From positions 13,132-77,131 of the forward strand of contig NIVC01003779.1 of NCBI GenBank assembly GCA_002269645.1: DNA of 64,000 bases, written 5' to 3'. The number at the start of each line of letters is the position of its first letter. Within the stretch, counting starts at the first letter, position 1. Shown one piece after another: positions 5,114 through 64,000 of the stretch. Below the pieces are notes generated by a model that searched no databases, was not told the DNA's origin, and was given only the letters and a program-made list of their open reading frames with translations. A program made the position numbers and the translations under genes. This stretch comes from Macrostomum lignano (Eukaryota).

Positions 5114-5974
5114 TTACGAGCTTCAGGTCGGCAGACGCATTGTATTGAAGGTGTTAATGATGAAGTTAAATGCCTCGGAGTAATTGGATGCCCTGGACCA
5201 GACATTAACGCGAACGTGCGGGCGGCCTTTCTCTGCCTTTGATTGACTGGGCGCACTATCCCATCTCTGCATTGCTTTGCTACCGTCCGTTCACCGCAGG
5301 CCAGTTATTAATTTTGCTAAAAAATAAGAGAATTCCCATTTGAAGCTGTCAATCAGGTCTGCTCCACACCAGTTGACAGGATTAGAGAAGGCCATCCGTC
5401 GCAAAGGCGGCGATGCTATTGACAGGTCACGACAAGATTTAGATCGAAGCAAGATTGCTGCGTAGGAGAGGGCGAAGATTTCTCAATGGGGAGCTCAGGA
5501 AGGACGGGAGCAGGGGAGGGAATTGAGCTTCCATATCTTCCATACGAGAGGAAAATAGCGGGTAGGCCACTCAGCGAAACGGCTGACTGGGCGGCAACAA
5601 AACGGTCATTTCCTACCGTGAGAAATGGCGAAATAATACGAGGACGGGGCAATATTAATGCTGGCCTCGGAATGCTCAGTGCTCAGCAGTTAATATAATA
5701 TCTGCTCCAGAGATCTGGCAGCCGGAACTTGCGAACCAGAATAAGTGCCAACTTTAATTTATTTTCTTTCCACGATTTGGCGCAAGTCTCCGGTGAGCCA
5801 TTCTCGATTTTCACGAGACGAAACGGCAAGTCTGGGCCCGATCGTGACAGGCAAAACCGCCTGACGCCAAGCCGCGAGTTGCACTGCGAATTTTGACAGT
5901 CTTATACGGAAATGAATCGAAATGCTGTGGAAACTTCGTGTGAAGATTCCTGGGGGAGTCAGTTGGGTCACAGA

Positions 5975-6225
5975 ATAGTCAGTGGGGTCACAGAGGAGTC
6001 AGTGGGGTCACAGAGGAGTCAGTGGGGTCACAGAGGAGTCAGTGGGGTCACAGAGGAGTCAGTGGGGTCACAGAGGAGTCAGTGGGGTCACAGAGGAGTC
6101 AGTGGGGTCACAGAGGAGTCAGTGGGGTCACAGAGGAGTCAGTGGGGTCACAGAGGAGTCAGTGGGGTCACAGAGGAGTCAGTGGGGTCACAGAGGAGTC
6201 AGTGGGGTCACAGAGGAGTCAGTGG
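5975..6225. repeat. 20-bp minisatellite AGTGGGGTCACAGAGGAGTC, about 12 copies
   Basis: Near-perfect tandem units are visible. Confidence 0.95.
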
Positions 6226-6244
6226 AACTTAAATGGTACTGAAG

Positions 6245-6738
6245 TGACACTACAGTGGCACTACAGTGACACCACAGTGACATTACAGTGACATTACAGT
6301 GACACCACAGTGACATTACAGTAACACTACAGTGACACCACAGTGACATTACAGTGACATTACAGTGACACCACAGTGACATTACAGTGACATTACAGTG
6401 ACACCACAGTGACATTACAGTAACACTACAGTGACACCACAGTGACGCTACCGAGCCACCACAGTGACACCACAGTGACACCACAGTGACACCACAGTGA
6501 CGCTACCGAGCCACCACAGTGACACCACAGTGACACCACAGTGACACCACAGTGACACCACAGTGACACTACAGTGACACCACAGTGAAAGTCAGTGACA
6601 CCACAGTGACACCACAGTGACACCACAGTGACACCACAGTGACACCACAGTGACACCACAGTGACACCACAGTGACACCACAGTGACACTACAGTGACAC
6701 CACAGTGAAAGTCAGTGACACCACAGTGACACCACAGC
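6245..6738. repeat. 9/11-bp minisatellite (CAGTGACACCA / CAGTGACATTA)
   Basis: Tandem degenerate units containing CACAGTG. Confidence 0.95.
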
Positions 6739-49600: not shown

Positions 49601-52600
49601 TCGCCGCCGCCGCCGCCGCCACCGCCGCGACCGCCGCGACTTTTAGACATCTTGGGCAGCGGGACGCCGGACAAGTTGAGCTGCTTGAGCTTCTTTAGCC
49701 GGCCGAATCCGGCTGGCAGGCGCCGGATCAGCGTCTCCTTTAGCAGGAGGTTCGTGAGCGCCGACATGCGGCCAATCTCCTCCGGCAAGCGGTTCAGCTG
49801 CGTCCCGCTGGCGTCCAGCAGCGAAAGCGAAGGCAGGTCGCAGACGAAGGTGGGCAGGTAGCTAATGGGATTGTAGCTCAAGTTGAGAAACTTTAAACGC
49901 TTCAGCCTGCTCAGGCTGGGGTCCAGCTTAGTGATGAAGTTTTCGTGCAACTGCAGATTGATGAGGCCCTCGGACATCTGGCTGAGCCAGCCGGTGTCGC
50001 GCATCTTGCACCGCGACAGCTCCAAGTTGGTGAGGTTGGCCGCCGAGAGCAAAGCGGCGTTGGGGAACGGCTGCGGCAGCACCTGGTTCTTGGCGCGAAT
50101 ATTGCGAAGGCAGTCCACGTGGCGGCCAAGATCATCTTGCGTCAGGACGGTCTTGGCCGCCGTGTGCGAGTCGCAGAGGTCGCGGCTGTGCGAATGTAGC
50201 ATCTGGGCGATGCGCAGCCCGTTGCCGCTGGCGGATTCCGGACGAGCATCCTAGAGGGGTTTTCCACGGGCTTGCCACGGTTAATCCATAAGCTTTGATG
50301 GGATTTTATCGTTAGAAACGTAGGTATGGTTGGTTAAATTTTGGTTAAATATGCAGCAACTCTGCTTACATATCCATAATTTTTGTTCCTAAAGTATTGC
50401 AGTGTCATAGTCTCGCTTCATATTATCGCTTATAGTGTAATGATGTGTCAGTCATAGCGTCTTCGTTCCTGTCATCTCTGTCTGCTGCAGTGCATTTCTT
50501 CGTGTCTTAACTCAAGGAATTACGATTTTTTGTATTTCCTTCAGCGATAAAACAATGTATAGCACAACATTACTTTTAGACGTCATTTTGTCCTCTGAGG
50601 AAGGAACGCGCTGCATAATATGCAACTTTCGACTGCTGGCAAGCAGTGCGTCTGACATTGGAGACCGCCACCAACGGGATTAGTCATAACCCTTCATACC
50701 CTTCATACTCTTCTTAATGCATTGCTACACTCGTATCTGCCCACAATAGCATCTCAGCCCCGGCGAATCACTTCCCCTATACAGGCCCACCTGCCACTTA
50801 CCGCCCTGCCAGATCTGACCCTAGCAACCGGTCCAGTTTTGGCGCATAGGCTGCTCTCCTTGTAGCCGTCCTGTTCCAGCATCCGCTTCAGCAGCAGCTG
50901 ATCTCTGTAGCTGCGCAGCACCGGCCAGATTCCCTGTGTGATCTGCGGGCAGGGGCATCAGTCTAGCTAAGTCTTGGTAATTAAGAGAGGCCGGTGCCAG
51001 CACTGCTTACCTGATTGACGCCCAGTTCGCTGTCGATTCCGGGCAGGTAAGCCAAGTCTGCCTTGGACAGAAAGGACTGCAAATTGGGCGCATTAACAGG
51101 TGTGTAAATAAACAAATACACACATTTATGCCAGTCGCTAGACACAGCAGAGAAAGCAAATTAAGAGTCTCACGGTGAATCGAAGCAGCATTCCAATCAG
51201 ATAGATGAGGTTGGTATCGTAGTGCTTCACTACATATCGGTACTCGTCCTCGGACAGCTCCACTCCCTGCTTGTCCAGCAGGTGCATGTCGCTCGTGTTG
51301 GCGCCTGTTGCGTTCATTGAGAGCGAATTCGGCGATAGAAAATGGGAACTAAGAAGCAATTTGGGAGCAAAAAGAAACAAAAAAGCAAGCCGCGCATTCA
51401 ATCGATTATCGAAGAGCCAAAATTCCGGAGCAACTGGCCAGGCAAATATTGAATAATCAGGCAATCAGGCAGTCGTGCCGGAAAGCCTGGCCTAGGCACA
51501 AGTGCGTTTCGCAGACCGGGGACAGACACTCCCGCCTCCCTGCTGCAGTTCGCAAAGAGAGAGCGACATAAACACTGGGAAAAACAGGCAGCGGAAAAGT
51601 TTACCCGAAAGTCAATCAGACAACGGATTAGCGGCAGGCCTCGCTTTTAGCCAAGCGGACTCCGGCTCGGGCAACCGGCCGCCTAGGGCATCAATGCAAT
51701 CCAGGCTATTAGCCTCAGCTTGTCATGCGAATCAAAACAAGAAGCGATGGGATTATAGAAATTCCCCAAGCGAGCCGGAGCCACATGAGGCGGGAGAAGC
51801 ATCTGCCGTTAAGCTTGATATTGACGTCACAGCGCGAGACATCAGCGGGAGCTCAAGCTCTCCAATCCCCAAATGGAGAACTGTTGAGCACTGTAGCACA
51901 AATTTAAACCGACAACTATGAGGCATCTTACGTCTCAAATAGCAGTCAGCATGCTTTGAGGACCTGAAGTCAACCATCATATCTCTCGTATTTACCATAT
52001 GAGCCGTTTAAGTCTATGGCCCACCCGCCTTTAATCTGCACGAACTCGCGCCCGAATATGAATTATGGCCACATTCATTAATCTACCACTCGCCTAGCCG
52101 GAAATCAAAGGGCAAAGGAGGTTTATTATGGGCAGACTTCTCGAGCAGCCGCAGCCGCAGCCGCAGCCGCAGCCGCAGCCGCAGCCGCAGCCGCAGCCGC
52201 AGCAACCGCAGAAGCGCCAGTCGACCAGCAGTCGCCAGCCCGTTCCAGCGGCAAAGCAGTCGAACAATGTGGGCTCAGAAGCGAACTGGCTAGACTCAGT
52301 CAGCACTTTCTCGGTGCCCGAGAAGTTGCTCCGCTTCGCGGCGACCATCCCTCAGGCGCCACCGTCCCGGCTGGCTTCTGCGCCGCCGCCACCGCTGCAG
52401 CTGCTTCCAGCCGGCGGTTTCATGTGCGAGTACCGCAACGGCGCCGCCGATGTGCGCGAGTTCTTCGCCCACCTCGGCTGGCCGCAGCTGCTGCCGAGGC
52501 CCAGCGAGAAAATGTGCGGCGGCGGCAGCGGCAGCAGCGTAGCCAAAAGCGTCGGTACCTGTGGCCCAGCCAACCGGCAGTGGAGCTGCGTCTGCGTGCA

Positions 52601-53423
52601 GTCCGCCCTCGCGGCCATGCCCGACTTCGCTTTCTTCTGGGGCAACCTGTCGTCCAGCACATATGCCCTGTGCATGGCGGCCAGCCAGCAGCGCCACAGG
52701 CCGATGGTGATGAACCGCATTCCCTGGGTGACGTTGATCAGCAACAAAAGCCAGCTGGCCGTCACCTGCATGGCGCACAAGCACTCCAGCACCAGCCTCT
52801 GCCTGCAGAGCCACATACCGGCTACATTCATCGTTGATCGAGACACAGACCGGAGCTCTCTGCCGGCGCTGGCCCGGCGCCTTCTGGCCATGCACCCGGT
52901 GTGGATAGTGAAGCCGCACAACTACGCAAAGGGCGAAGGAATTCAGTTGGCATTTCGCGAGGACGGCGAGGCAGCGATGCTGCGCAGCCTGTCCAGCGAC
53001 CGCTGGGGCATCGGCAAGGTGGTGCAGTGCTACATGACCGACCCCATGCTGCTCAGCGGCAAGAAGTTCGACTTGCGCGTCTTCCTACTCCTAGTAACCA
53101 CCGGCTCAGGGCTGCTGGCGTTCTACCACACCGGCTACGTGCGGCTGGCGCTGAATGACTTTCTGGTCTGCGACAAGCAGCGCCTGGACACGCACCTCAC
53201 CAACCAGGCAGTGCAGGCCAAACAGTCTGGCTACGAGGCTAACAAGGAGGACACCATCTGGACGGTGCAGCAGATGAACAGCTACCTCAACCAGCTGCCG
53301 AGCAGCGAATTCGGCAACGACTGGACGATCAGGGAGCTGCATCCGAAGGTCAAGTTGCTCGTGGCCGCCCTGGTTGAGGCGCTGGCGCAGCGGGTGCAGA
53401 AGGACCGGCGCAACAGCAGCGGC

Positions 53424-53466
<43 letters not shown>

Positions 53467-56400
53467 GGGAGCGGCACCCGTGCCGGAACACGTTCAGCCT
53501 GCTGGGCCTGGACGTGCTGGTGGACTCGGCCGGCAAGCCCTGGCTGATCGAGGCCAACGCGGATCCCGCGCTCAGCCGGCAAACCCGGACATTGGAGCGG
53601 CTGCTGCCGACCATCACGGCGGAAGCATTCGGTCTGGCCATGGAGATCATCTACAAGTGCCACGGTGCCGACCCGCAGGCACCGGCACCGGCAGCCGAAG
53701 ATTTGGCCTTCCTGCAGAACTTCCAGCACATTGGTTTCTACCCAGTGACAGAGAAATGAGGGCCGGTCTCGCAGTGCTGCTGCTCAGCTCTGCTCGCTTT
53801 CAGTTTATAAAAGACGCGCGTCGCCAGTCCCTCCCTGGCCGGTGCCTCCTCATTTTAAGCGCCTCAACCTCGCGATGAGGCGTTTGGTTTTTTGTTGCAG
53901 ATTTACAAGATAAGGAAGGCGTGAAAGTAAAAAAGTGAAGCAGTTCTTGTCCCGGAAATCTTCAGCATCTTTAATGCGTTTTAAATTTTGCTTAGCGCTG
54001 TTCGTGTGTGCTTTTGAAAATTGAAAAAAATCTCCAAATAGAGACACAGCTGCGCCCGATATTGGGAGACCTGCACCTGCTGCCTTCAACGAGAATAATT
54101 ACACAGTAGATTGGCCGTTTGGTAAATTACTTCTAGCTGGCAAAATAAGTACAATAAAAGTAAAAGCATTTTTTGGAGTAGGTTTTTGGCATCATGGCGC
54201 AACGCTTCTTTCGACACCATCCCACAAGCAGTGCTGGGCGACTCTTGACTCCTGCATACAACATACAAGCACGTAGGTGTACAGCGTGTACGCTATCTGT
54301 GCCTTGGAGGTTTGACTCTCATGGGTGTGATCGCACGACAGCCCCAATTGAATGTGACGCGGTTACCACTGAGCTGCTCTGCCCTTTTAATTATCTAGCA
54401 AGGAAGGTGGCAACGCAATTAGATAACAACTTACTCCACTGCAGACCGCGACACAAAAAGTGCAACCGCTGATCTTTCGGCGACTGCATCTTTATCCTGG
54501 GCGCGATGAAGATGTCCTCGGACTTGAGCGTACCCGGCAGCAGGACAAAGTAGCCGGCATTCCTGGCCGGGTTCCACTTGACGGTCAGGCCGGCGGTCAG
54601 GGAGTATGGCGAGTTCACGCTGGAGGTGCAGCGTCTCGACTGCTTGTGCCGGATGGGCAGCGGAGTGTACTGGCTCTGAAGCGGTGGGAGAGAGAGTTGC
54701 GCCAGGCCAGGTCAGCGCTGAGTTCAGGCAGATGTCAGCAGTCTCTCTTCACCAACCAGAGCTGAATTAGCATTCAAGTCAGGCGTCGGGACTGCGGCTT
54801 AAGCCTCGTCAAAGTCCGTCCGACAGTTTAATTTATTTTTCGCTATCAAACCTGCATGCAATACTTGCCTACGCGGCATTCTACATTGAATTCTAATACT
54901 TCGCTACAGAAGTCCTGCGATAATATTGACTGAGAGCTCCTTGGCATACCCACCTGCTGATTAGGAGCATAGGGGAACACCGACGAAGCTAATTTAAAAA
55001 ATATCATTTCAGATTTCAAACTACAGAAACTTCGCCAATGTCTTGCCAGGTGCAAAAAGCGTGAAAATTAATCAAGCAAGACTCACGTCCAGGTATTGAA
55101 AGTTTCCAAACGGCACGGGCAGATATGTGGGGTAAGCCGACAGATAGTCGTACCACTGATCGAAGCCCTTCAGTTGTTCTGCGGAATTTTGGCATTGACC
55201 TTTAGACTTAAAGTACATCCAAGACTTAAGCAATGCTCTCAGCTGAACGAGAAGTGTTTTATCTGCTCACTCTTGTCAACTACGGCGTTGATCTCCTCCG
55301 GGTAAAAGCCCAACGGCCGGATGTCGTCAGAGTCGACAGCGAACAGCCTGCCGTGCTGCAGATCCTCCGGCGGCGCCACCTCCAGAAGGCCGTCGCGGAT
55401 GCTGGTGACGACGCCCGGCAACCAGGTCTGACCGACTCCGGTGCGGAACAGCAGCAGCATGCCGGGATGGAAGTGCAAGGTGGAAACGTGCTGCGGACAG
55501 TGTAGAAACAATCACGAATTTAGAGTGCCCAATTCGTTATGCGTACTTTTATTTTACTGGGCCAAGCTCGAGGGCATCATAAAGGTTACTTCACTAAATT
55601 TCTCTGCGCAATAGGTGACACATTTTATCCAGTGCAATATGCCCAAACATAAAAAGTTGACGCCACTACAAACAAGATATGATAATGCGAACGACGTGAA
55701 TCAACTAATACCCGTATGGTACAAAGATGCATTCTGTAATTTTTTGAATTCGTCCTAGAGGCTCGAAAAATGAAATAAAATTACCGCAAACTGCGGACAG
55801 CCCAGAATGGCCAGGTTCCGACTTTCGGATGAGGGCTCTTGCTCCTCGAGTGGGTAGCGAGCTCGCACAAAAGCGTACAGCTGATCCGTTATGGGAGCTC
55901 GCAGCAAAACTTCGCTGTTGATTGAAACTTCCAGTTGGTTGAAGTAGCACTGAAATGAGTTTTTTTATAGTTAATTGCGTCTGCAGTGTCAAACACTCGA
56001 ACAGAATAACACAAATGGTCGGGGATTGCACAAGCATCGCCCAAATGGTCTGGGACTGCACTAGCATCCGCCAAAATGGTCTGGGACTGCACTAGCATCG
56101 CCAAAATGGTCTGGGACTGCACTAGCATCCGCCAAAATGGTCTGGGACTGCACTAGCATCGCCAAAATGGTCTGGGACTGCACTAGCATCCGCCAAAATG
56201 GTCTGGGACTGCACTAGCATCCGCCAAAATGGTCTGGGACTGCACTAGCATCGCTCAGATGGTCTGGGACTGCACTAGCATCCGCCAAAATGGTCTGGGA
56301 CTGCACTAGCATCCGCCAAAATGGTCTGGGACTGCACTAGCATCCGCTAAAATGGTCTGGGACTGCACTAGCATCCGCCAAAATGGTCTGGGACTGCACT

Positions 56401-59400
56401 AGCATCGCTCAGCTGGTCTGGGACTGCACTAGCATCGCCAAAATGGTCTGGGACTGCACTAGCATCCGCTAAAATGGTCTGGGACTGCACTAGCATCCGC
56501 CAAAATGGTCTGGGACTGCACTAGCATCGCTCAGATGGTCTGGGACTGCACTAGCATCCGCCAAAATGGTCTGGGACTGCACTAGCATCGCTCAGCTGGT
56601 CTGGGACTGCACTAGCATCGCCAAAATGGTCTGGGACTGCACTAGCATCCGCTAAAATGGTCTGGGACTGCACTAGCATCCGCCAAAATGGTCTGGGACT
56701 GCACTAGCATCGCTCAGATGGTCTGGGACTGCACTAGCATCCGCCAAAATGGTCTGGGACTGCACTAGCATCGCTCAGCTGGTCTGGGACTGCACTAGCA
56801 TCGCCAAAATGGTCTGGGACTGCACTAGCATCCGCCAAAATGGTCTGGGACTGCACTAGCATCCGCCAAAATGGTCTGGGACTGCACTAGCATCCGCCAA
56901 AATGGTCTGGGACTGCACTAGCATCCGCCAAAATGGTCTGGGACTGCACTAGCATCCGCCAAAATGGTCTGGGACTGCACTAGCATCCGCCAAAATGGTC
57001 TGGGACTGCACTAGCATCCGCCAAAATGGTCTGGGACTGCACTAGCATCCGCCAAAATGGTCTGGGACTGCACTAGCATCCGCCAAAATGGTCTGGGACC
57101 GTACTAGCATCGCCAAAATGGTCTGGGACTGCACTAGCATCCGCCAAAATGGTCTGGGACTGCACTAGCATCCGCCAAAATGGTCTGGGACCGTACTAGC
57201 ATCGCCAAAATGGTCTGGGACTGCACTACTCTGGGAGTATATCGCCACTCAAATAAACTACAAAGACGATTGCCCCCCGACACGCCTGAACAAAATTCAG
57301 GAATACAGTCACTTCTATCAGAGAATACAAAATATTTTCGATTCCGTAAGGCTTAAAAGTATCGATTTGAGTGTCTCTATCCAGGTTTTTGTAAGTTACA
57401 TCTTTACAACTATTAGAAGCAGTTGATCAGAGAATAAGATGAAATGACGACTAACATCGTAGTGGTCGTTGTAGCAGCAGCCGGTGATTCTGAGCACCAC
57501 ATCCGTGATCGGCTCGTCAGCGGGCAGACTGTCGTCCTTAAGTTGCCTGACAAACTCCCAGTCGTGAAGAGCGCTTTTCTTCAAGCTAAACTTCAGCTGA
57601 CGATCGCGAAGCGTCAGGCCAATGATGGCGTCCTCACTGGCGTCGTCATGCAGGGCCAACCAGACGGCCTGCTCGCAGCCGGGACGGTGCAGGAAGCTGA
57701 CCTCCAGGTGGTCGAAGCTGGCGTGCCGCATCGGCAGGCGAGACCGGAGCAGCGTCTCCAGCGTCACCGGCTGATCCGAAGACTTTTCTTCGTCGAATCT
57801 GGGCCGGCTGGCCGCGACCAGCAGGTTGCCCTGCAAAGAGGCTGGCAGGCCAGACACCACGTCGAATGCCTTGGATGCGAAGGTCGGGTAGACGCGACAG
57901 AAGTGGCGCCACATCTTCGCCACGGTTTTCTTCCACAAGAAGCAGTGCTCGCAGGAGAAGGAGTTCTGGTATCGGTCTATCCAGTCGTGCTGCGGAAACG
58001 GCGCCAGACGGTACCACATGAAGCGCCACTCGGCGTCGGTCATCTGCTTGGCGCGGCACTTGCTGCAGCTCTTGTGGTTGGCGAGTGTCCGGCCGACCTC
58101 CGGTACCGAAAAGGTGTTCTTTAGGCCCGAGTGAAAGCATTCACCGCGGCAGTAGACTCGCAGCTGCGGAGTTGATCCGGTTGGGTCGTGGTCAATTGGG
58201 TTGCGGCCAGTGAGGTTGTGGTCAATTGGGTTGCGGCCAGTGAGGTTGTGGTCAGTTAGGTTGCGGCCATTGAGGTTGTGGTCAATTGGGTTGCGGCCAG
58301 TGAGGTTGTGGTCAGTTGGGTTGTTGTTAGGTATTTGGTTATGATCGGATGGGTTGTGTTCGGTTGGATTGTAGACATTTGGGTTGCGGTAAGTTGCTGG
58401 GTTGCCGTCAGTTGCTGGGTTGGTGCCAGTTAAGTTGTGGTTAGTACTGAGACCACTAATCTACACAACAAACGGCAAACCATTTCTCCTACCGTCAATT
58501 ACCTTCGATGGCCCCTCACTCAGATCACCCTTCACCAAACCTTGCCTCACATCTAAATACGCGTTGCACGTCATTACACCATTCATTGCAAAATTCTAAG
58601 CACCTTAAAGCCTGTATGCACGCATAATTATGATGAAGCAATAATTAATGCTCTATAAAAACGCACCTTGTGATGCAGGTAGGGATACTCGGCAGCCACG
58701 GACTCCAAGGTGGTCAGCAGGTCGCTGAAGCAGGACCAGATGTACTCTTTGAGCGAGTCGCTGTTGGCCCCTGGCACAGTTTCATTCATGCGGCACTCGA
58801 AGTCAATGGAAGACGAAGCCAGGGCTGCGGTGCGGTGCGGATTTTAGGAGTCGTTTTGCAAAGGGAAACACTACTCAGAAGCAGAAACTACAAAGCTTAT
58901 CCCTCCCGTTTAGTGTAGCTGTAGCTGGGTCACGGAATAACAGTGAAGGAAAAAGAAAGATTGAGGCGGCTCATTTATGCATTCCCAATTTACGCTCTTG
59001 TGGAATAGCTCCATCAATGGACGAACTCTTGGCTTTAACTAATGTTAAATTTACATTAAATACTGAATGCATCTGGACTGCCTAGGAACGAAATTATCTC
59101 ATTCATTTTGGATATCAATTGTCGAAGCAAATGAGATTTCAAACGTGACTTAATAATCATTATTTTAATTATGCCCAGGAAGGAGATGAAAGCGCGAATT
59201 ATGGCTGCGGTAACTTGCGATAAGAAGAGATAGGCATGCATTCAGCTTCCCGCAGAATTTTACATCTTTAAAGAGAGAATCGGGACTTTTTGCTATTCAG
59301 CACTGTGGTGGAGTCGCTTTGGGCGCTGCCGTGGATCAAGCGGAGGACCCTTCAGACCCTTCAGCGCAGGCATACTATTTTTTATTAAAGGCAGGGGCTG

Positions 59401-62400
59401 TGGGCACCCTGGCGCACTTTAAGCGACATTGTCACACAACCGGCGAGAGGCATTGCTGCCCATTCCGCCGACTCCCCTGAGCAGGCACACAAGCGCGCGG
59501 ATGCGTACGCAGTGATACGCACAGGCACACAATCACACAGGAGTGTACAGCGGCCCTAACTTTATTTATCGTTAGGCATGTACACTTCACTGTGCCTTGG
59601 GGGTTGTCCATCAAGGACGTTATTTACACGAGCAGAGCCAAGCCGAGATTCCAATTTAGCCCCAAATTAATGCGACTGCACTTGGAATCGAGCCTGGCAC
59701 ATCAGAGCGCTTCGCTGGACCACCGGGCTACGGCCCCTGCGCTCGCAGGCACACACTCGGCCCTAACCTTTTCGTTGTCAAACATGTACACTCTCTGTGC
59801 CCTTGGGGTCGGGGACGGATGGCCATGGGGCGAGCTTCGCAGCACGAATCAGATTTTTGCGCACGAGTCCCAAATTAATGTGGCCGCGCACAGAATCGAC
59901 TTTGAGTTGAACGCATTTGCCGCTGAGCTGCTCTGCCTGCTACACCCAGGGCTCACTCGAATGCAGGCCGTAGGTGCAGAGGATGTCGCAGACTCCGCGC
60001 TGCACGTGCATCCCGGTGCGCCACACCTGCACCACGCCGGTGGCCACGGGACTCTGCATGCAGGCGGTGGCGAACCTCGCCAGCAGGTTGGCGGGAAAGC
60101 CGACGCGGAACTTCACGGAGAACAGCAGGCAAATATCGCCGGGTGGGAAGTCCTCGGACTGCAGGTCCGGCATGTACATGCTCTTGTGGTGCCGCATGGA
60201 AAGCTTCTCTTCCGTGGCGCTGAATCGGATGGACACGCGGGGCTCCAGGCGCGACCAGAGGAAGTAGCGCCGGCTCGAGGCCTCCGCTGCGTGCTGAAGG
60301 CGGGCGACCCGGCCGGCCTGGGTGGACTCGCGAACCGTGTCCGTGTGGCCGAGCAGGCCGAAGCGAAGGAGGATGCGGCGCAAGGTCTCAGCCTGTGGAA
60401 GTTTGGTTTTTGCATCGCTAAGCATTAAGTTATTACTAATATGATGGACCCTCGATACCTTAGAAACGTTATGGTCAACGATTTAGTTCATCAGATTGCT
60501 ATTTGAAGCCATCTGTGCGCACGTCGCAAACATTAACCAGATGGCTTGTCCGACATCACCAGACACATGAAAACAACTTCATAAACAATAGAAAAACACG
60601 TGCTAAGTCGTTCTAAAGCAAATAAACAGAAAAGCATTTCCAGAGACATACTTCATTTCCGTGGTGGCAGCTTTGAGGAATCACTAGTCAATAGTCATAC
60701 TGTCGCCTTTTGAGCTCTTTCAGGAATTAGTATTCATAGCTCACAAAATGCATGACTCACCTCATCCTCGGTGGCTCCGGCAGCCAGCAGTTCAGCGCGC
60801 AGCTCCGCCTCGCTGAGGGCCGGCACATTGCGGCCGAGCGTCCAGCAGCTGTCGCCGTTGCGGTAGTCGGCGATGGCATCGAGATGGGCTAGACAGGACA
60901 TGAACCAGGCCAGGTCCAGCACCACTGGCTGGTTCGTCCCTTCCGGGAAGAAAAGCAGCTTGCCCTGCGATTAAATTTTTAAGAACTGTGATTTTCTTAT
61001 CGAGTTTTACTACTCGTAGTAACAAGTACATAGCAGCAAATGAACCCTTTGGAAAGAATTTAAAATTATATACAGATTGCTACTGAATCTATCAAAATAT
61101 ATGTTATTTTTCTATCCTTCTATTCTTTGGGCAGACCAAGGCGCCGCAGTCCAGCAATCCCGCACCATTTGATGCAGCTTCTTCAGCAGCGCCACAGTCC
61201 GCCGGCTCTCTCGCTGCGGCAGGCCAAGCTCAGACATCAGCACATTCAGTGGGAAGATTCGCCGCCACGACTGCTGCTGCTGCTGTTGCGACTGCTGAGC
61301 AGCCAGAAAGTCGCTCAGCCGATCAGCCAGTTGCCAGTTGGACTCGGTGAGGCGACGCGTCTCCCACAGCTGCAGCGACTCGGCGGCTGTTCTGGCCAGT
61401 TGGGTCACGTGACGCGCCAGACGATTACTCTGAGGTAGACAGGTGAGGAGGCAAGTGGAAATCGCAAATTGCACATCAAGGCTACAGTTCACCCGCAGCA
61501 GTAAGGAGGGGCAAGCAGTGACGCTCATTCTGACACCTAAGCCTCTAAATTCTACATGCAAGTGAAATAAGGAACGAACTTTGTTATGTTCGACTGCTGA
61601 AACGAATTACTGTCTGTGATTCGTTTCTCATTTTAGTTTCGTACTGCTCGTTAGTAATAAATCCCTAGAATAGATTTCTCATTCGCTATGGAGTAATTCT
61701 CAATAGTTCCCGCCAGTCTAAACGTCACACAATGTACTCTTACCTCCTTTTCGATTCCTGCTGACTCAGCCACGGCTGCTCCAGCCGGATTCAGCTCCCG
61801 CTCGTGCTCCTTCACCAACAGCAGGTACTTGATCACCGCGTACACGTAGAGCCACATGCAGTTGATAATGTTAAACCACCGTTTCACCTGCGAGATGAGC
61901 GCTGTTTGTAGGAATTATAAATTAAATACGCAGAAGAAAGAATCAACTCTTACAGTTTCTCCAAAGGTCTCCCACTCTGGAACAAGGGCGGTCAGGTCCG
62001 CCAGCAGCTTGGCGTGTCTGCCCGAGAGAGACTCCGTCTGAAAGCGGATTTTTTGGGTTTGACTTAAGACGAATCAGGAAATTTTGGATTAGTTTACAAA
62101 GTGTCTCACAATGTAATTCGTGTCCTTGAAGCGCAACAGAAAGCGCGTCTCCGACACAAGGTTCTTTGCCGTTGGCCAGGCGTCGTCTTCCGTGAATGGA
62201 ATGTCGAATATGAGCATAACGCACTTCATTGTGGTCACTACGACGGGTGGAGGAGCCGAAAGGGAGCGCAACTGAAAGAACAGAATGAGCATTTACAACT
62301 GTTGATAATCTGTGCATTCAGATTCAGATTGCATGTCAGATTCAGCTAACACTGACCTCCATGAAGTCCGCCTTGGTGCACCGGTCCAACGCGTCAATGG

Positions 62401-63944
62401 CAAACATCTACAAACAAGTAAGCAGTTGTTCTTTGTTTTACAGTACTTGTACCCGTACTGTACTTGAAGTAGTCTATTCCTAAAGCAAATGGCGAACAAG
62501 CAACTTACGTAATCGTGCTCCGCCCAATACTGCACTTGAGCTTGTACGTTGGAGTCCACCTTTACTTCCCGGAGTGTAGTCTCGAATACCTGAGAATGTT
62601 TGAATTCAAATTCCGGTTTAAAAATCTGGCTCTTTCTGAGCCTAGTGTCTTTTTGAATACAAGTAGTTTTCATTTCACACCACCAGTCTTCATTGAAGCC
62701 TTCGACTGGAACGGCAACCAAAGTGATGGGAAAGTGGGTACATCCGCGCACTGAATCGACTGAACGTAACGCCACTGGTGCGGAAAGTCCTTGTCGTAGC
62801 AACTGAAGTTATGATTGAAGCAGCGTATTTCGTGTCTGAGAGATTATCTGATAGGCTGCTCAGAGCAAAAACGAAACTATTATTCTTACCTATTTAAGTG
62901 CTCCTTCTCCAAGTGCTCCTTCATGTTGTCTACCTGATCCCTGAGCATGTTTTCCAGTCGGATTTCAGCGAGGCAACATTCTCAACCCCTTTCTGGCTGC
63001 TCACCGTAGCGACTAAGAAGCAGCGGCGCTTCGAACACCTGCGACGGCGAGGCGCGTGACGATTAATGAAGGTGAAATACCTACGAGCGCACATTAAATG
63101 GACAGATCTGTCAGACTCACCGCTCCACTCGAACTGCGTCAATCATTCGCATAATTTCTAGCTGGGGATTCTCTGTGCGCTCCGCATCCACTACCAGCAC
63201 GAAACCGGCTGTGTTGGACATGAACAGCGAGCTGTACACTGAGCAAGGGTTTGGCGAAAAGTAATTGGGGACTAAGTACGATTCTAAACATTTGAAAATC
63301 GTCCTCATCTGCGATGCCTATGGTCAAGCACAGGCTAAACTATTTTAAACAAATTCATAGATTTAACAAGGTTTTGAATTAGGCAAGACCTATTGATCTC
63401 TTTAAGGCACTGTGCCCTGCGTGCTATACGCTTTAATATTTTATTGCAAATATATATTAATAACTTTCGATCATTGCACTTATTTAGAGAGGCTTGAAGC
63501 CTACGTAGTAAGAGCGTCGGACTCAAGACTGAAAGGTCGGGGGTTGGATTCTCGACCCACTCGAACAATTTGTGTCCTTGAGCAGGACACTTAACTCTGC
63601 ATTGCTTCAGTTCACCCAGCTGTAAAATGGGTGCCAGCATTAGCTGGGGTAACTGAGGGGGTGTGTATGGCGACCCCCCCCAGTCCGTGCTTGCTCGTGG
63701 GATCGACACACGCAAGGCTATCAAAACACGCTTGAATTCACTTCACCCAGTTTAACACTCCTTTCACTTGACCAGTGCACTTACTAGGTCTGCGCGCATC
63801 TCGAACACAGTCAGGTCCAGGTCGCCAACAGTGGCTGAGAGCGCTCGAAAAGTCGGTGGGGCTGCACAGACGACGTTACCGCCGATTTTGACGACGACGG
63901 CCTCGACTTGGAGCTGGAAGATGGCTGAGCTCCGCCCACCGCGC
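27717..63944 (-). CDS. Giant double-Roco protein: degenerate ROC+dynein MTBD, COR, linker/Tudor-like, LRR/EF-hand, ROC, COR, TIR, TIR, CaaX (about 2850 aa in window, 5' incomplete)
   Basis: Exons 5'->3': ~63785-63944, 63121-63238, 62934-63038, 62742-62802, 62357-62407, 62110-62271, 61954-62037, 61744-61887, 61166-61429, 60761-60964, 59957-60392, 58667-58824, 57456-58163, 57230-57285, 55785-55914, 55271-55490, 55087-55178, 54873-54914, 54435-54675, 51174-51304, 51011-51076, 50802-50942, 49105-50250, 48481-48646, 47307-47712, 42970-43076, 42814-42892, 42242-42388, 40248-40606, 40004-40151, 39815-39932, 38081-38270, 36920-37253, 32508-32765, 31932-32042, 29602-29799, 29200-29307, 27717-28631. 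All GT-AG and phase-compatible except the first junction and a 1-nt deficit in 49105-50250. Single-gene continuity is inferred from splice logic only. Confidence 0.7.
28706..29185. repeat. 15-bp minisatellite (GTAGACTGGGAAATG), about 32 copies, intronic
   Basis: Near-perfect units filling intron 28632-29199. Confidence 0.95.
29602..32765 (-). CDS. Roco gene TIR domain 2 (3 exons), catalytic-type
   Basis: DVFISYCW (box 1), LSCWIDIE (box 2), CKLVVACLSDE|YVASKNCQMEYRFA, RPMVICVVG. Confidence 0.88.
29815..31035. repeat. About 21-bp minisatellite (CTAGACTAGATACCAATCTCA), intronic
   Basis: About 1.2 kb of tandem variant units. Confidence 0.95.
31400..31800. repeat. Pyrimidine-rich minisatellite (TCTCACCTGTTCC / CTCCCTTCTCATTTC), intronic
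   Basis: Directly visible. Confidence 0.85.
32145..32432. repeat. 20-bp minisatellite (CACAGTGATCTGCAGAGATT), about 14 copies, intronic
   Basis: Tandem units in intron 32043-32507. Confidence 0.95.
32770..33575. repeat. GT-rich compound minisatellite (about 78-bp units, then TTTTGAGGTGTGTGATGGG), intronic
   Basis: Tandem units that start right at the acceptor of exon 32508-32765. Confidence 0.9.
34611..35882 (+). CDS. Intronless class A peptide-receptor-like GPCR (FMRFamide-receptor-like clade), about 423 aa, nested antisense in Roco intron 32766-36919
   Basis: Seven hydrophobic segments, N-terminal NGS/NDS sequons, TM3 RNWSLVMIAGSRC (DRY replaced), TM4 VCAPRLFE, TM6 FIICELP, TM7 DSFTNFIIYSSTSNTFR. 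The frame is open from 34374, but ATG 34611 is the likelier start. Confidence 0.9.
   Translation: MLAYVAVNGSCLNDSGSSEGPAGGAANVYLYIACVLSYLNALTNGFSLIVFILDKKNVIMGRLLLLLSLSETVLNIGFAVNLTVMLTVMADAGRQAFDSPLRPQMITCAFFLSFAIANAFIMVRNWSLVMIAGSRCEVVSNPFSTRRGQLFSHRRSQACYALTLILSLLVCAPRLFEFTWTICEYPAENNSTETTVYSLTTATHHILDKNPSYRHYKTLLVFPLQTIAPIFLISGLSLVIIFILRRRRLLQQNSGGSAGSGSGRGGGGASGSGSRSQDAATKTVMILMFSFIICELPTFLFFILNQTIFASMRGFNQIRMHTTFLANILLSADSFTNFIIYSSTSNTFRETVRRMLHLPDRRQGRSNNYNYYNNHLQNNNYSMLSREANALRRAEAAAAATAAPSHIEDAALAPLKWHPGGAD
36920..38270 (-). CDS. Roco gene TIR domain 1 (2 exons), degenerate
   Basis: DVTLIFCCA...IQAGLETAGLSV...SGCCLCLISNEFVLSDTCAQYLSLA...KKPLVLGLVGSG..W parallels TIR2 but lacks the Glu after S..C. 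Confidence 0.75.
37676..38097. repeat. 47-bp minisatellite, about 9 copies, containing the exon end and 5' splice site
   Basis: Each unit (minus strand) reads CTGCCGGCTTATCTGT|GTGAGTATAG..., identical to the true donor at 38081/38080. Confidence 0.9.
38612..39510. repeat. 56-bp minisatellite, about 16 copies, intronic
   Basis: Unit CACTGTGGACTGAGTGTCTGACGGTTGTCCAGCCCCAATGCTGAGTATCTGTGTG; source of three long repeat ORFs. Confidence 0.95.
39815..43076 (-). CDS. Roco gene COR domain 2 (6 exons)
   Basis: GEHVPEAWLNFEKAI, AVQFLHDMGSLQHF, VIINPQWLVDVM, VVPCLLP, YTFDYLPAGLFNRAQVRL, IWQRGSLL, VPCIDC. Confidence 0.9.
40682..40935 (+). mobile_element. tRNA-derived CORE-type SINE, family 1 (intronic)
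   Basis: A-box TAGCCTAGAGG, B-box GGTTCGATTCCC, CORE-like body and the same 3' tail as the copy at 4847. Confidence 0.85.
41498..42150. repeat. 30-bp minisatellite (TGTGCTCAAGGCTCAACAGCTACTCGACTT), about 21 copies, intronic
   Basis: Tandem units. Confidence 0.95.
42410..42790. repeat. 12-bp minisatellite (TTAATCCTGCTG), intronic
   Basis: Fills intron 42389-42813. Confidence 0.95.
44520..45000. repeat. Degenerate CT-rich repeat (CTCTCTCTAATCCATCTAAT), intronic
   Basis: Recurrent degenerate units are visible. Confidence 0.75.
46828..47190. repeat. 23-bp minisatellite (CAGTACATTCTGACCTCCCAGTA), intronic
   Basis: About 15 tandem units. Confidence 0.95.
47307..48646 (-). CDS. Roco gene intact ROC GTPase (2 exons)
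   Basis: G1 KLMFVGLGGAGKTS, G2 ITDGIDI, G3 VWDFAGQ, YYNTHQFFLTARAVYLLVW, G4 VVGTHCDK, G5 FSVSS. Confidence 0.95.
47775..48250. repeat. 35-bp minisatellite (GTTTGAAGCAGTGAAGTGACGATTTGACTCTGGGG), intronic
   Basis: About 13 tandem units in the intron that splits the ROC domain. Confidence 0.95.
49105..50250 (-). CDS. Roco gene LRR exon with Gly-rich insert, EF-hand and a 1-nt frameshift
   Basis: LxxLxLxxN repeats (LTNLELSRC, LINLQLHEN, LKFLNLSYN, LRTLVLDNN) and EF-loop DVNNDKILQAQE. Exon length is 1146 nt where flanking phases need 3n+1. Confidence 0.85.
52128..53759 (+). CDS. TTLL10: Intronless tubulin-tyrosine-ligase-like enzyme, closest in motif pattern to TTLL10 polyglycylase; nested antisense in Roco intron 51305-54434
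   Basis: WIVKPHNYAKGEGI, VVQCYMTDPMLLSGKKFDLRVFLL, GYVRL, HLTNQAVQAK...KEDTIW, FSLLGLDVLVD...PWLIEANADP. 543 aa with QP and polyQ tracts. TTL-family assignment is solid; the TTLL10 subfamily call is tentative. Confidence 0.8.
54435..57285 (-). CDS. Roco gene linker exons including a Tudor/Agenet-like barrel
   Basis: Six phase-compatible exons. 55271-55490 encodes FHPGMLLLFRTGVGQTWLPGVVTSIRDGLLEV...LFAVDSDDIRP, a Tudor/SH3-like pattern. Confidence 0.6.
56020..57229. repeat. 30/31-bp minisatellite (AATGGTCTGGGACTGCACTAGCATCCGCCAA), about 39 copies, intronic
   Basis: Tandem units that begin exactly at the predicted donor of exon 57230-57285. Confidence 0.95.
57456..61429 (-). CDS. Roco gene COR domain 1 (divergent) followed by a CxxC-containing region
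   Basis: LKKLHQM|GKLLFF...VVLDLAWFM, YFLWSRL, FRVGFPANLLARF, VWRTGM, SVAAEYPYL...LRVYCRGEC. CSKC and CEHC follow. Confidence 0.75.
58190..58320. repeat. 30-bp repeat x4 (GTGGTCAATTGGGTTGCGGCCAGTGAGGTT), intronic near acceptor
   Basis: Directly visible. Confidence 0.85.
59394..59900 (-). mobile_element. tRNA-headed SINE, family 2 (one long copy plus an adjacent partial copy), intronic
   Basis: Matches 11387-11712. Minus-strand A-box TAGCCCGGTGG and B-box-like GGCTCGATTCC at about 59685-59730; second partial body at 59740-59900. Confidence 0.75.
61744..62407 (-). CDS. Dynein-heavy-chain-type microtubule-binding domain (4 exons) within the Roco gene
   Basis: IDALDRCTKADFMELRSLSAPPPVV..MKCVMLIF...WPTAKNLVSETRFLLRF...IINCMWLYVYAVIKY matches the recalled DHC stalk-tip pattern AL..L.K.DI.ELKS...PP.AV...W..AKK.L...FL..L...GLC.WV.A..KY. 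Confidence 0.8.
62742..63944 (-). CDS. Degenerate ROC-like domain (G3-G4 region), 5' incomplete
   Basis: DLDLTVFEMRAD (G3 position), YSSLFMSNTAGFVLVVD (parallels HQFFLTARAVYLLVW), RRCFLVAT (G4 strand). The junction between 63785 and 63238 is not phase-resolved. Confidence 0.55.
63499..63686 (+). mobile_element. tRNA-derived CORE-type SINE, family 1 (3'-truncated, intronic)
   Basis: Same head and CORE-like body as the copies at 4847 and 40682; the tail diverges after CCCCCAGTCC. Confidence 0.8.
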
Positions 63945-64000
63945 CTGTAGAGCTAGGCGCGCCAATGCTGACGGTTACGGCCGGGTCGCAGATGATGGCC

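What the first reader, a model, noticed from the sequence alone, without database searches (positions are those of the whole stretch)
61744..62407. Dynein microtubule-binding domain transplanted into a ROC-like domain
Seen: four exons encode a recognisable DHC stalk-tip MTBD (helix pattern, PP motif, WxxAK, FL, CxWVxAxxKY-like end). It sits between the G4-like strand (RRCFLVAT) and the COR start, with no AAA ring or long stalk coiled coil nearby. Known: in dynein, MTBD affinity is switched by the registry of the stalk coiled coil. Inference: here the host ROC-like domain may set or switch MTBD affinity, a motor-independent reuse of the dynein foot.
Basis: partly seen in the sequence, partly recalled or inferred. 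Interest (0 to 1): 0.87.

Follow-up and report, generated by a model that had tools for sequence, protein, structure and literature searches.

The report
Dynein foot domain in flatworm ROCO gene
A flatworm (Macrostomum lignano) gene of the LRRK-like ROCO family carries a genuine copy of dynein's microtubule-binding "foot" without any dynein motor, an unreported domain combination that probably anchors a signalling protein to microtubules.

Summary
On the minus strand, four phase-0 GT-AG exons (62407-62357, 62271-62110, 62037-61954, 61887-61744) encode a dynein-type microtubule-binding domain (MTBD). Its best solved relative is DNAH6 (E=4e-9). An AlphaFold model (pLDDT 90) matches only dynein stalk/MTBD structures. 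The window is Macrostomum lignano, and GenBank's RNA-seq-guided models PAA49830.1 and PAA49605.1 splice these exons the same way.

It is not a dynein. Full dynein heavy chains match only these exons. A 99.75%-identical sister contig gives 9 kb of extra upstream sequence holding an FBXL-type LRR and the start of the reading frame, with no AAA ring.

After the MTBD comes a divergent COR-like domain (moderate support). Before it lies a region that is at best a dead ROC-like fold (weak support, no GTP-binding motifs). The MTBD sits at the ROC-COR junction, not inside ROC.

The proposed ROC-controlled affinity switch is not supported. There is no nucleotide pocket, both stalk prolines are lost, and CC1 is short. 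A constitutive microtubule anchor is the likeliest role, but that is inferred. Motor-less MTBD arrays also turned up in protists.

The parts
62357..62407 (-). MTBD exon 1: end of CC1 and helix H1 (MFAIDALDRCTKADFME)
   Evidence: Canonical AG/GT borders, phase 0-0. Aligns to DNAH6 2780-2796. Family-conserved K39, D41 and E44 are kept.
62110..62271 (-). MTBD exon 2: PP motif and helices H2-H4 (LRSLSAPPPVVV...WPTAK...RFLLRFKDTNYI)
   Evidence: P51, P52, W76, K80, F88 and L89 are conserved. This is the only stretch of the window hit by full-length dynein heavy chains.
61954..62037 (-). MTBD exon 3: helix H5 region (TESLSGRHAKLLADLTALVPEWETFGET)
   Evidence: The AF2 model shows helices here with pLDDT above 90.
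61744..61887 (-). MTBD exon 4: helix H6 and start of CC2 (VKRWFNIINCMWLYVYAVIKYLLLVKEHERE...)
   Evidence: The S-x-A-A motif is lost, the H6 Trp aligns to Tyr, and the CC2 proline is replaced by R156. The single difference from the sister copy is synonymous (61759).
62509..62589 (-). CC1 exon (VFETTLREVKVDSNVQAQVQYWAEHDY), the short ascending strand of the hairpin
   Evidence: Phase 0-0 exon. AF2 predicts a helix for residues 14-35 of the 216-aa model. The CC1 proline is replaced by H25. GenBank model PAA49830.1 for this locus begins here.
61166..61429 (-). Exon holding the CC2 continuation (dynein-homologous to about ...ADRLSDFL), a poly-Q junction, and the first COR-A motif (LLKKLHQM)
   Evidence: BLASTP of dynein P0013 aligns up to P0023 residue 603. 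The COR HMM and MAFFT align LHQMGKLLFF...VVLDLAWF to fLhdlGslqyF...vvinPqWl.
60761..60964 (-). COR-A-like exon (GKLLFFPEGTNQPVVLDLAWF...)
   Evidence: AF2 pLDDT is 80-93. Foldseek hits 3dpt_A COR, LRRK1 and LRRK2.
59957..60392 (-). COR-A/COR-B-like exon (AETLRRILLRFGLL...FRVGFPANLLARF...)
   Evidence: Exact match to P0023 716-860. PANLLARF aligns to the COR motif PaGlFnR.
58667..58824 (-). COR-B-like exon (LASSSIDFECRMNET...YPYLHHK)
   Evidence: Exact match to P0023 862-913. It falls within the Foldseek COR alignments.
57456..58163 (-). End of the COR-like region plus a Cys-rich region of unknown fold
   Evidence: Exact match to P0023 914-1149. No PDB sequence match.
63782..63999 (-). ROC-like exon (degenerate G1-G3 region: ...LDLTVFEMRADL). 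The frame is broken in this copy at 63958, 63947 and 63861.
   Evidence: P0023 185-257 maps here only with frame switches. Indels relative to sister contig L001. The ROC HMM aligns LTVFEMRADL to ysvwdfaGq.
63129..63239 (-). ROC-like exon (VYSSLFMSNTAGFVLVVDAERTENPQLEIMRMIDAVRGA in the intact copy)
   Evidence: The window lacks a G at the acceptor (63239) and has 2 extra nt at 63130.
62892..63038 (-). ROC-like exon (VFEAPLLLVATVSSQKGVENVASLKSDLENMLRDQVDNMKEHLEKEHLN in the intact copy).
   Evidence: There are two frame-shifting 1-nt indels in the window, at 63016 and 62957. The ROC HMM aligns APLLLVATVSSQ to apifvvgthid.
62683..62804 (-). Last ROC-like exon (SCYDKDFPHQWRYVQSIQCADVTHFPITLVAVPVEGFNEDW in the intact copy)
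   Evidence: 1-nt indel at 62739. The GT donor present in L001 (TGG|GTGAGC) is destroyed in the window at 62682-62676.

Best explanation
Shown: the four exons, together with the exon before them (CC1) and the first third of the exon after them (CC2), encode a bona fide dynein-type microtubule-binding domain on a short antiparallel helical hairpin. It is closest to the inner-arm DNAH6 type.

Shown: the domain lies inside a large Macrostomum lignano gene that is not a dynein. The domain order is FBXL-type LRR, then a degenerate region that is at most ROC-like, then [CC1-MTBD-CC2], then a divergent COR-like domain, then a Cys-rich/unknown region, then a second LRR. On the same strand the canonical ROC-COR(-TIR-like) exons follow.

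Inferred origin: the dynein stalk tip was captured at the DNA level. It still has introns, and all of its exons are symmetric phase 0-0. The capture happened in the Macrostomum lineage, at the junction between the first ROC-like and COR-like domains.

Inferred function: the domain works as a constitutive, registry-independent microtubule or axoneme anchor. It would localise the attached ROCO signalling module to microtubules, much as engineered fixed-registry MTBD fusions do. It does not act as a nucleotide-switched foot.
For: Identity of the MTBD:
- phmmer against PDB gives E=4e-9 to DNAH6, and the best matches are all dyneins at their stalk tip.
- 19 further hits in 1.84e9 representative proteins match only this segment.
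- BLASTP against dynein heavy chains gives E~3e-12 over P0023 415-603.
- The near-invariant family residues K39, E44, P51, P52 and W76 are kept.
- The AF2 model has pLDDT 90.4 and pTM 0.73.
- The Foldseek PDB top 39 hits are all dynein stalk/MTBD. Yeast MTBD 6kjn gives TM 0.74 and rmsd 2.6 A.

Real, expressed gene:
- Splice sites are canonical and in phase.
- GenBank models PAA49830.1 and PAA49605.1 use the same junctions. Those models come from a genome-guided RNA-seq assembly (PMC5730564).
- The same arrangement occurs on two contigs and in an older UniProt model.
- The 147 MTBD codons are open at only 32% identity to the nearest dynein.

Not a dynein:
- There is no other dynein similarity in the window, in the 1755-aa protein, or in 9.25 kb of extra upstream sequence on L001.
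- The reading frame opens right after an in-frame TGA, with the first Met at residue 16.
- The N-terminus is an FBXL2/17-type LRR, E=5e-17.

ROCO context:
- COR HMM p~0.002 and ROC HMM p~0.011 against 2000 shuffles each. Each HMM reported a match only on its expected side of the MTBD, and the opposite flank gave none.
- MAFFT aligns both COR motifs.
- Foldseek hits CtRoco COR at 3e-4, LRRK1 at 5e-4 and LRRK2 at 3e-3.
- A canonical LRR-ROC-COR lies downstream on the same strand. The GenBank models join it as far as its LRR.

Static anchor rather than switch:
- No G1, G3 or G4 motifs.
- Both stalk prolines are replaced.
- CC1 is short.
- The H1-H4 half is well conserved with DNAH6 (KAD..E.R, PP, WPTAK).
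Against: - Microtubule binding is untested.
- The MTBD core is acidic (pI 5.3, net charge -2) against a median of 8.6 and +3 for 37 relatives. One genuine dynein fragment is equally acidic.
- The H5-H6 half is divergent: S131, A133 and A134 are lost and the H6 Trp is not aligned. H6 is one of the three helices reported to contact tubulin (PMC6629372).
- The AF2 models used alignments containing dynein MTBDs and ROCO COR domains, so the fold matches are not independent of the sequence homology.
- Support for the ROC-like fold is weak.
- No orthologue outside M. lignano was found, so long-term selective constraint cannot be measured. The two copies are 99.75% identical.
- In this window copy the upstream ROC-like exons are frame-broken. 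The architecture as described holds for the sister copy.
Confidence: 0.6

Rival explanations
1. The MTBD is a switchable foot whose microtubule affinity is set by the conformational or nucleotide state of the host ROC-like domain, through a change in coiled-coil registry.
For: The hairpin emerges where a ROC C-terminal helix would meet COR-A. In ROCO proteins this interface moves with the GTPase cycle (established knowledge of LRRK2 and CtRoco). The CC2 helix runs without a break into the COR-like domain. LRRK2 itself binds microtubules through ROC (PMC9758056, listed).
Against: - The ROC-like region has no P-loop, DxxG or NKxD, and only p~0.01 similarity to ROC.
- Its AF2 confidence is 30-70.
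- Both prolines that delimit the sliding stalk are lost.
- Detectable CC1 is at most 25 residues.
- In this window copy the ROC-like exons are frameshifted, yet the rest of the gene is intact.
Confidence: 0.08
2. The domain no longer binds microtubules. It is kept as a helical spacer or has been re-used as a protein-protein interaction module. For comparison, outer-arm dynein MTBDs bind light chain LC1.
For: - Acidic core with pI 5.3.
- Divergent H5-H6 and loss of the S-x-A-A and H6 Trp alignment.
- Loss of both prolines.
- A solved structure shows an MTBD acting as a protein-binding surface (6l4p).
Against: - H1 and H3, two of the three tubulin-contacting helices, keep the DNAH6-like residues (KAD..E.R, WPTAK).
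- One true dynein fragment is as acidic.
- The predicted fold superposes on the microtubule-bound, high-affinity MTBD at 2.6 A.
Confidence: 0.27
3. Artefact. The arrangement is a chimeric assembly or annotation, or a dead pseudogene fragment of a dynein gene lying in an intron of a ROCO gene.
For: - The M. lignano assembly is redundant and repeat-rich (PMC5730564).
- This window copy has a patch of 23 small differences just upstream.
- The GenBank models are 'partial hypothetical proteins'.
Against: - The structure is the same on two contigs and in an older assembly's model.
- All junctions are GT-AG and in phase with the neighbouring non-dynein exons.
- RNA-seq-guided models splice them together.
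- There are no stops in 147 codons despite 68% divergence from DNAH6. A random open frame of that length has a chance of about 1e-3 (my own estimate).
- No other dynein exons lie within 25 kb.
Confidence: 0.05

Closest known systems
Dynein heavy chain stalk-tip microtubule-binding domain, closest to axonemal inner-arm DNAH6
   Same: - Significant sequence homology (E=4e-9, 32% identity).
- The same helix order, CC1-H1...H6-CC2.
- Conserved K/D/E of H1, the PP motif, WPTAK of H3 and FL of H4.
- The predicted fold superposes on solved MTBDs with TM 0.66-0.74.
   Different: - No AAA+ ring, linker or long stalk.
- Detectable CC1 is at most 25 residues, against roughly 100 in dynein.
- Both stalk prolines are replaced.
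- H5-H6 is divergent.
- Net charge is acidic.
- Non-dynein domains lie on both sides.
ROCO proteins (LRRK1/LRRK2, bacterial Roco, invertebrate 'pats1-like' LRR-Roc-COR-TIR proteins)
   Same: - Domain order LRR, then a G-domain-like region, then a COR-like domain.
- COR-A (LHxxGxLxxF...VVLDxxW) and COR-B (FPxxLxxRF) motifs.
- The model matches CtRoco COR, LRRK1 and LRRK2.
- A canonical family member lies directly downstream on the same strand.
- LRRK2 also contacts microtubules, via ROC (PMC9758056).
   Different: - The first G-domain-like region lacks all nucleotide-binding motifs and is not significantly similar to Roc.
- An insertion of about 220 residues of dynein origin sits at the ROC-COR junction.
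- No kinase domain was seen.
- No relative of these flanks was found outside M. lignano among 1.84e9 representative proteins.
Engineered fixed-registry MTBD fusions (seryl-tRNA-synthetase-MTBD chimeras, e.g. PDB 3err, 6rzb)
   Same: An MTBD with a short piece of stalk is grafted onto an unrelated protein base, so its affinity is fixed by how the two helices are held. These are among the best Foldseek matches.
   Different: The flatworm arrangement is natural, the base is a ROC-like/COR-like pair rather than SRS, and the registry is unknown.
Motor-less tandem MTBD-array proteins of protists (found here: P0003 MMETSP, P0006 Diphylleia rotans, P0004/5/7/8/9/12/15/17/18/20 from metagenomes and metatranscriptomes)
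   Same: They use the dynein MTBD fold without any AAA+ motor, and many units also lack the stalk prolines.
   Different: They have 2-4 consecutive units per protein, no ROCO context and a different lineage. The flatworm domain is closer to true dyneins (25-32% identity) than to these units (16-22%).

Membership tests
Dynein MTBD domain family (stalk tip) | Significant sequence similarity to the MTBD of dynein heavy chains | tested here: met
   phmmer against PDB gives E=4e-9 to DNAH6 2780-2926. HMMER against 1.84e9 proteins gives E to 6e-10. BLASTP gives 3e-12.
Dynein MTBD domain family (stalk tip) | Six-helix bundle carried on an antiparallel CC1/CC2 hairpin | tested here: met
   AF2 pLDDT 90.4. 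The Foldseek top 39 PDB hits are all dynein stalk/MTBD, with TM up to 0.74. Caveat: the alignment used for the model contained MTBD relatives.
Dynein MTBD domain family (stalk tip) | Near-invariant residues (H1 K/E, the PP motif, the Trp of H3) | tested here: met
   K39, E44, P51, P52 and W76 are present. The H6 Trp aligns to Tyr.
Dynein MTBD domain family (stalk tip) | Universally conserved prolines in CC1 and CC2 that delimit the MTBD (PMC6629372) | tested here: not met
   The CC1 column (Pro in 20 of 34 relatives) holds H25. The CC2 column (Pro in 12 of 33) holds R156.
Dynein MTBD domain family (stalk tip) | Binds microtubules | not testable with these tools
   Needs co-sedimentation, TIRF or localisation experiments.
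Dynein heavy chain | AAA+ ring (AAA1-6), linker and long stalk around the MTBD | tested here: not met
   tblastn/BLASTP of a 4157-aa dynein heavy chain and two large fragments hit only the MTBD, both in the window and in L001. L001 adds 9.25 kb upstream. The reading frame starts at an FBXL-type LRR.
ROCO family (module around the MTBD) | Roc GTPase domain with G1 (GxxxxGK[ST]), G3 (DxxG) and G4 ([NT]KxD) motifs | tested here: not met
   The motifs are absent from P0023 176-385. FEMRAD stands in place of DxxGQ and ATVSSQ in place of THxD.
ROCO family (module around the MTBD) | Overall similarity or fold of a Roc domain | tested here: inconclusive
   The ROC HMM scores 2.3 bits, and 22 of 2000 shuffles reach that score. 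There is no PDB sequence hit. AF2 pLDDT is 30-70, with a beta/alpha order compatible with a G domain, but no GTPase appears among the Foldseek hits.
ROCO family (module around the MTBD) | COR domain directly after Roc | tested here: inconclusive
   The direction is supportive. COR HMM p~0.002, hhalign E=0.016, and MAFFT aligns both motifs. AF2 COR-A pLDDT is 80-93, and Foldseek hits 3dpt_A at 3e-4, LRRK1 at 5e-4 and LRRK2 at 3e-3. However, phmmer and BLASTP are not significant, and the model's alignment contained COR sequences.
ROCO family (downstream module, window about 50250-39968) | LRR + Roc with intact G motifs + COR | tested here: met
   KLMFVGLGGAGKT, DFAGQ and GTHCDK are present. MbRoco2 scores E=1e-27 and LRRK2 ROC+COR about 1e-23. 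The homologues carry Pfam Roc, COR and TIR domains.

The most novel reading that the evidence does not exclude
The dynein MTBD is a mobile, motor-independent microtubule-anchoring module that has been reused at least twice: once in a Macrostomum ROCO signalling protein, and once in protist proteins made of 2-4 tandem MTBD units. These would form an undescribed class of microtubule-associated proteins. In the flatworm, the module would place an LRR-ROC-COR(-TIR-like) signalling machine on ciliary or cytoplasmic microtubules.
Probability: 0.35. Interest if true: 0.75.

Novelty: new variant of a known kind. Interest (0 to 1): 0.62.

Why it matters
The dynein MTBD is normally treated as an inseparable part of the motor, with its affinity set by the stalk registry. 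A natural protein that keeps the MTBD but has discarded the motor and the stalk prolines is a ready-made test. It asks whether the domain can work as an autonomous microtubule anchor, and which residues are needed for that.

It also adds an unexpected link between ROCO proteins and microtubules. That link is otherwise known from LRRK2, whose ROC domain binds microtubules in Parkinson's-related contexts.

The protist MTBD arrays found on the way suggest the phenomenon is wider than one flatworm gene. M. lignano has transgenesis, so localisation and knock-down are feasible.

Limits: the gene is so far restricted to one species, is annotated only as a hypothetical protein, and its function is entirely inferred.

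Tried and rejected
- My first hand-made splice model of the ROC-like exons (used as the query) was wrong in about 60 residues. It threaded open frames that exist only because of indels in this copy. It was replaced by the sister-copy model.
- The search for homologous proteins with the MTBD alone found nothing at E<=1e-3, because E-values there scale to 5.8e9 sequences.
- phmmer of either flank against PDB gave no ROC, COR or dynein hit.
- BLASTP of the flanks against the window's own canonical ROC and COR was not significant.
- hhalign recovered only the COR-A motif, at E=0.016.
- The look-up of encoding contigs for the UniProt fragment P0001 returned nothing.
- Literature searches for an MTBD outside dynein, a ROCO-dynein domain fusion, or MTBD repeats found nothing relevant.
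- I considered that the long helix of the ROC-like region (VENVASLKSDLENMLRDQVDNMKEHLEKEHLN) is a remnant of dynein CC1. No dynein similarity was detected there, so the question is left open.
- I considered an acidic pI as disqualifying for microtubule binding. I rejected this because a genuine dynein fragment is equally acidic.
Full report
**1. What is in the sequence**

The gene runs on the minus strand. Reading 62407 to 61744 gives four exons: 62407-62357, 62271-62110, 62037-61954 and 61887-61744. Each has an AG acceptor and a GT donor, and each is in phase 0. The coordinates match the finding exactly.

With the neighbouring exon 62589-62509 upstream and exon 61429-61166 downstream, the spliced peptide is a helical hairpin of about 216 residues.

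**2. Is it a dynein MTBD**

Yes.
- phmmer against all PDB sequences puts dynein heavy chains in the top 14 places, each at its stalk tip. The best is DNAH6, with E=4e-9 at residues 2780-2926 and 32% identity over 144 columns.
- A full HMMER scan of 1.84e9 representative proteins, using a 494-residue spliced query, returned 22 hits. Apart from the organism's own proteins, every hit matched only the MTBD part, at query positions 158-384.
- In an alignment with 37 related units, the near-invariant positions K39, E44, P51, P52 and W76 are all kept.
- AlphaFold2 on that alignment gave pLDDT 90.4 and pTM 0.73.
- The Foldseek top 39 PDB matches are all dynein stalk or MTBD structures. Examples are yeast MTBD 6kjn (TM 0.74, rmsd 2.6 A), 6l4p_B (0.71) and 6rzb_C (0.66).

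Because relatives were in the alignment, the fold match confirms the sequence homology rather than testing it independently.

**3. Organism and expression**

The window is Macrostomum lignano. P0002 is GenBank PAA49830.1 (BOX15_Mlig030103g1, on a 77-kb contig). It is 100% identical to the spliced product.

A second model, P0023, is PAA49605.1 (Mlig032810g1). It comes from contig NIVC01003833.1, fetched here as L001, which is 99.75% identical to window 64000-47690.

These GenBank models derive from a genome-guided RNA-seq transcriptome (PMC5730564). The splicing of the MTBD exons to their non-dynein neighbours therefore has transcript support. The assembly is known to be redundant because of chromosome duplication (same paper), which explains the two copies.

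**4. It is not part of a dynein heavy chain**

A 4157-aa dynein heavy chain and two large dynein fragments were searched against the window, against L001 and against the 1755-aa protein. They match only the MTBD, at P0023 411-603.

L001 supplies 9.25 kb beyond the window's end. P0023 is collinear there, with GT-AG introns. Its frame opens right after an in-frame TGA, and the first Met is residue 16. Residues 58-160 are an FBXL2/FBXL17-type LRR, E=5e-17.

**5. The host domains**

*Downstream flank.* Plain searches fail here: phmmer against PDB and BLASTP against the window's canonical COR find nothing. An HMM built from 28 invertebrate ROCO COR domains scores 4.2 bits, and only 4 of 2000 shuffles do as well.

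That HMM aligns LLKKLHQMGKLLFFPEG-TNQPVVLDLAWF to fLhdlGslqyF...vvinPqWl, and PANLLARF to PaGlFnR. hhalign gives E=0.016, and MAFFT finds the same two alignments on its own.

An AF2 model of P0023 176-960 has pLDDT 80-93 in COR-A. It hits CtRoco COR 3dpt_A (3e-4), LRRK1 (5e-4) and LRRK2 (3e-3). The alignment contained COR sequences, so I rate 'COR-like' as moderately supported.

*Upstream flank.* The ROC HMM scores 2.3 bits, with 22 of 2000 shuffles as good, p~0.011. It aligns LTVFEMRADL...GFVLVVDAER...APLLLVATVSSQ to the G3, beta4 and G4 region.

No P-loop, DxxG or NKxD exists. AF2 confidence is 30-70, and no GTPase appears among the Foldseek hits. The predicted strand/helix order is compatible with a G domain, but that is all. 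At best this is a nucleotide-dead pseudo-ROC.

In the HMM tests, neither HMM reported a match on the opposite flank.

Context helps the ROCO reading. A canonical LRR-ROC-COR lies downstream on the same strand, with MbRoco2 at E=1e-27 and LRRK2 at about 1e-23. Its homologues carry Pfam Roc, COR and TIR domains. The GenBank models join it as far as its first LRR block at 50250-49489. Whether ROC2-COR2 is in the same polypeptide is open.

**6. Corrections to the finding**

(a) The MTBD is not inside the ROC-like domain. In P0023 the G4-like strand is at residues 299-310. A 35-residue helix, a further strand and about 80 residues in all follow before CC1 starts at residue 386. The hairpin therefore sits at the ROC-COR junction.

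(b) 'RRCFLVAT' is an artefact. Of the 37 differences between the window and L001, 23 fall in window 63958-62624. They occur in exons and introns alike, and most are 1-nt deletions in the window. One patch at 62682-62676 destroys the GT donor of the last ROC-like exon. Only 3 differences occur in the next 13.8 kb, and the one inside the MTBD, at 61759, is synonymous.

P0023 can be threaded on the window only with frame switches at 63859, 63014, 62957 and 62739. GenBank's model for this locus accordingly starts at 'QVFETTL', the CC1 exon. Whether this patch is unpolished assembly or a decaying 5' part of this copy cannot be told from here.

**7. How it most likely works**

*Shown.* Homology to dynein covers H1 to about 45 residues of CC2. 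On the other side, only the 27-residue CC1 exon precedes H1.

Both stalk prolines, described as universally conserved and used to delimit the MTBD (PMC6629372), are replaced by H25 and R156.

The H1-H4 half is well conserved with DNAH6. The H5-H6 half is divergent.

The core is acidic (pI 5.3, net -2) against a median of 8.6 and +3 for relatives. A true dynein fragment is equally acidic.

*Inferred.* The host has no nucleotide pocket, the prolines are gone and there is no long stalk. A registry switch driven by the host is therefore unlikely. The domain more plausibly acts as a constitutive microtubule or axoneme anchor for the attached signalling module, a natural analogue of fixed-registry SRS-MTBD fusions. 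The main rival is that it no longer binds microtubules and serves as a spacer or protein-binding module.

*Origin, inferred.* The fragment has introns, and every exon from CC1 to COR-A is symmetric phase 0-0. This favours DNA-level exon capture from an inner-arm dynein gene in the Macrostomum lineage. No relative of the flanks exists outside M. lignano among 1.84e9 representative proteins.

**8. Comparison with what is known**

I found no paper describing a dynein MTBD in a non-dynein protein, a ROCO-dynein domain fusion, or MTBD repeats. The search library is limited.

The HMMER scan showed, unexpectedly, that motor-less MTBDs are not unique to this gene. Twelve of the 22 hits are proteins with 2-4 tandem MTBD units and no AAA modules. 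They include a complete MMETSP ORF (P0003), Diphylleia rotans (P0006) and several metagenomic proteins. The flatworm domain is nearer to true dyneins (25-32% identity) than to these units (16-22%), so the two reuses look independent.

**9. Verdict**

The case is a new variant of known kinds, namely a ROCO-type gene that has captured a dynein MTBD. It is present in GenBank only as a hypothetical protein. Function is inferred, and the decisive experiments are ordinary ones.

Noticed in passing
window 52098-53756 (+): A 553-codon open frame encodes a tubulin-tyrosine-ligase-like enzyme (TTLL7 4ylr E=5e-12; also TTL and TTLL6). It lies on the opposite strand, inside the intron between the exons at 54675-54433 and 51302-51174 of the MTBD-bearing gene model. 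So a tubulin-modifying enzyme is nested in a gene that carries a microtubule-binding domain.
   Followed up: partly
window about 50250-39968 (-), and 32828-32415 (-): A canonical invertebrate ROCO module: LRR, then Roc with intact G1/G3/G4 (KLMFVGLGGAGKT, DFAGQ, GTHCDK), then COR. Its homologues carry Pfam Roc, COR, PF25497 and TIR domains. A TIR-like open frame (DVFISYCWANSQEAV...) lies further downstream. Whether it belongs to the same polypeptide as the MTBD module is unresolved.
   Followed up: partly
proteins P0003-P0009, P0012, P0015, P0017, P0018, P0020 (not in the window): These are protist and metagenomic proteins made of 2-4 tandem dynein-MTBD-like units with no AAA+ modules. Examples are a complete 1150-aa MMETSP ORF, a Diphylleia rotans protein, and a 1207-aa protein seen on five metagenome contigs. 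I found no description of such proteins in the searched literature.
   Followed up: partly
window 63958-62624 compared with L001 9293-10635: 23 of the 37 differences between the two 99.75%-identical copies are packed into 1.3 kb. They are mostly 1-nt deletions in the window, in exons and introns alike. One patch of substitutions at 62682-62676 removes a splice donor. Only 3 differences occur in the next 13.8 kb. This is either an unpolished patch of assembly or a decaying 5' part of this copy.
   Followed up: partly
window 62589-62594 (-): GenBank model PAA49830.1 starts with the codon CAG, which is the acceptor of the CC1 exon. The frame upstream is open, so the transcript model seems to begin right there. 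The M. lignano spliced leader ends in ...TTGCATG (PMC8629364). Trans-splicing at this acceptor would give ATG|GTA TTC GAG, in frame, and a protein starting M-VFETTL... directly at the MTBD hairpin. This is speculative.
   Followed up: no
window 61270-61300 (-): A short poly-Q tract (AAQQSQQQQQQS) sits where detectable dynein CC2 homology ends and the COR-like sequence begins, inside a single exon. It may mark the fusion junction.
   Followed up: no
window 62589-60761 (-): All seven consecutive exons from CC1 through COR-A are symmetric phase 0-0, with lengths 81, 51, 162, 84, 144, 264 and 204 nt. This pattern is permissive for exon shuffling.
   Followed up: no
window about 63500-63700, about 4880-5110, about 40720-40900: Three copies of what looks like a tRNA-derived SINE-like element. 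Their ORF translations all contain ...LAPILQLGELKQCRVK.... One copy lies in the intron between the first two ROC-like exons.
   Followed up: no
window 1300-1800, 5900-6500, 28700-29200, 38600-39600, 46800-48300, 55700-57350: Long micro- and minisatellite arrays lie in introns and intergenic DNA. They create long spurious open frames in several reading frames.
   Followed up: no
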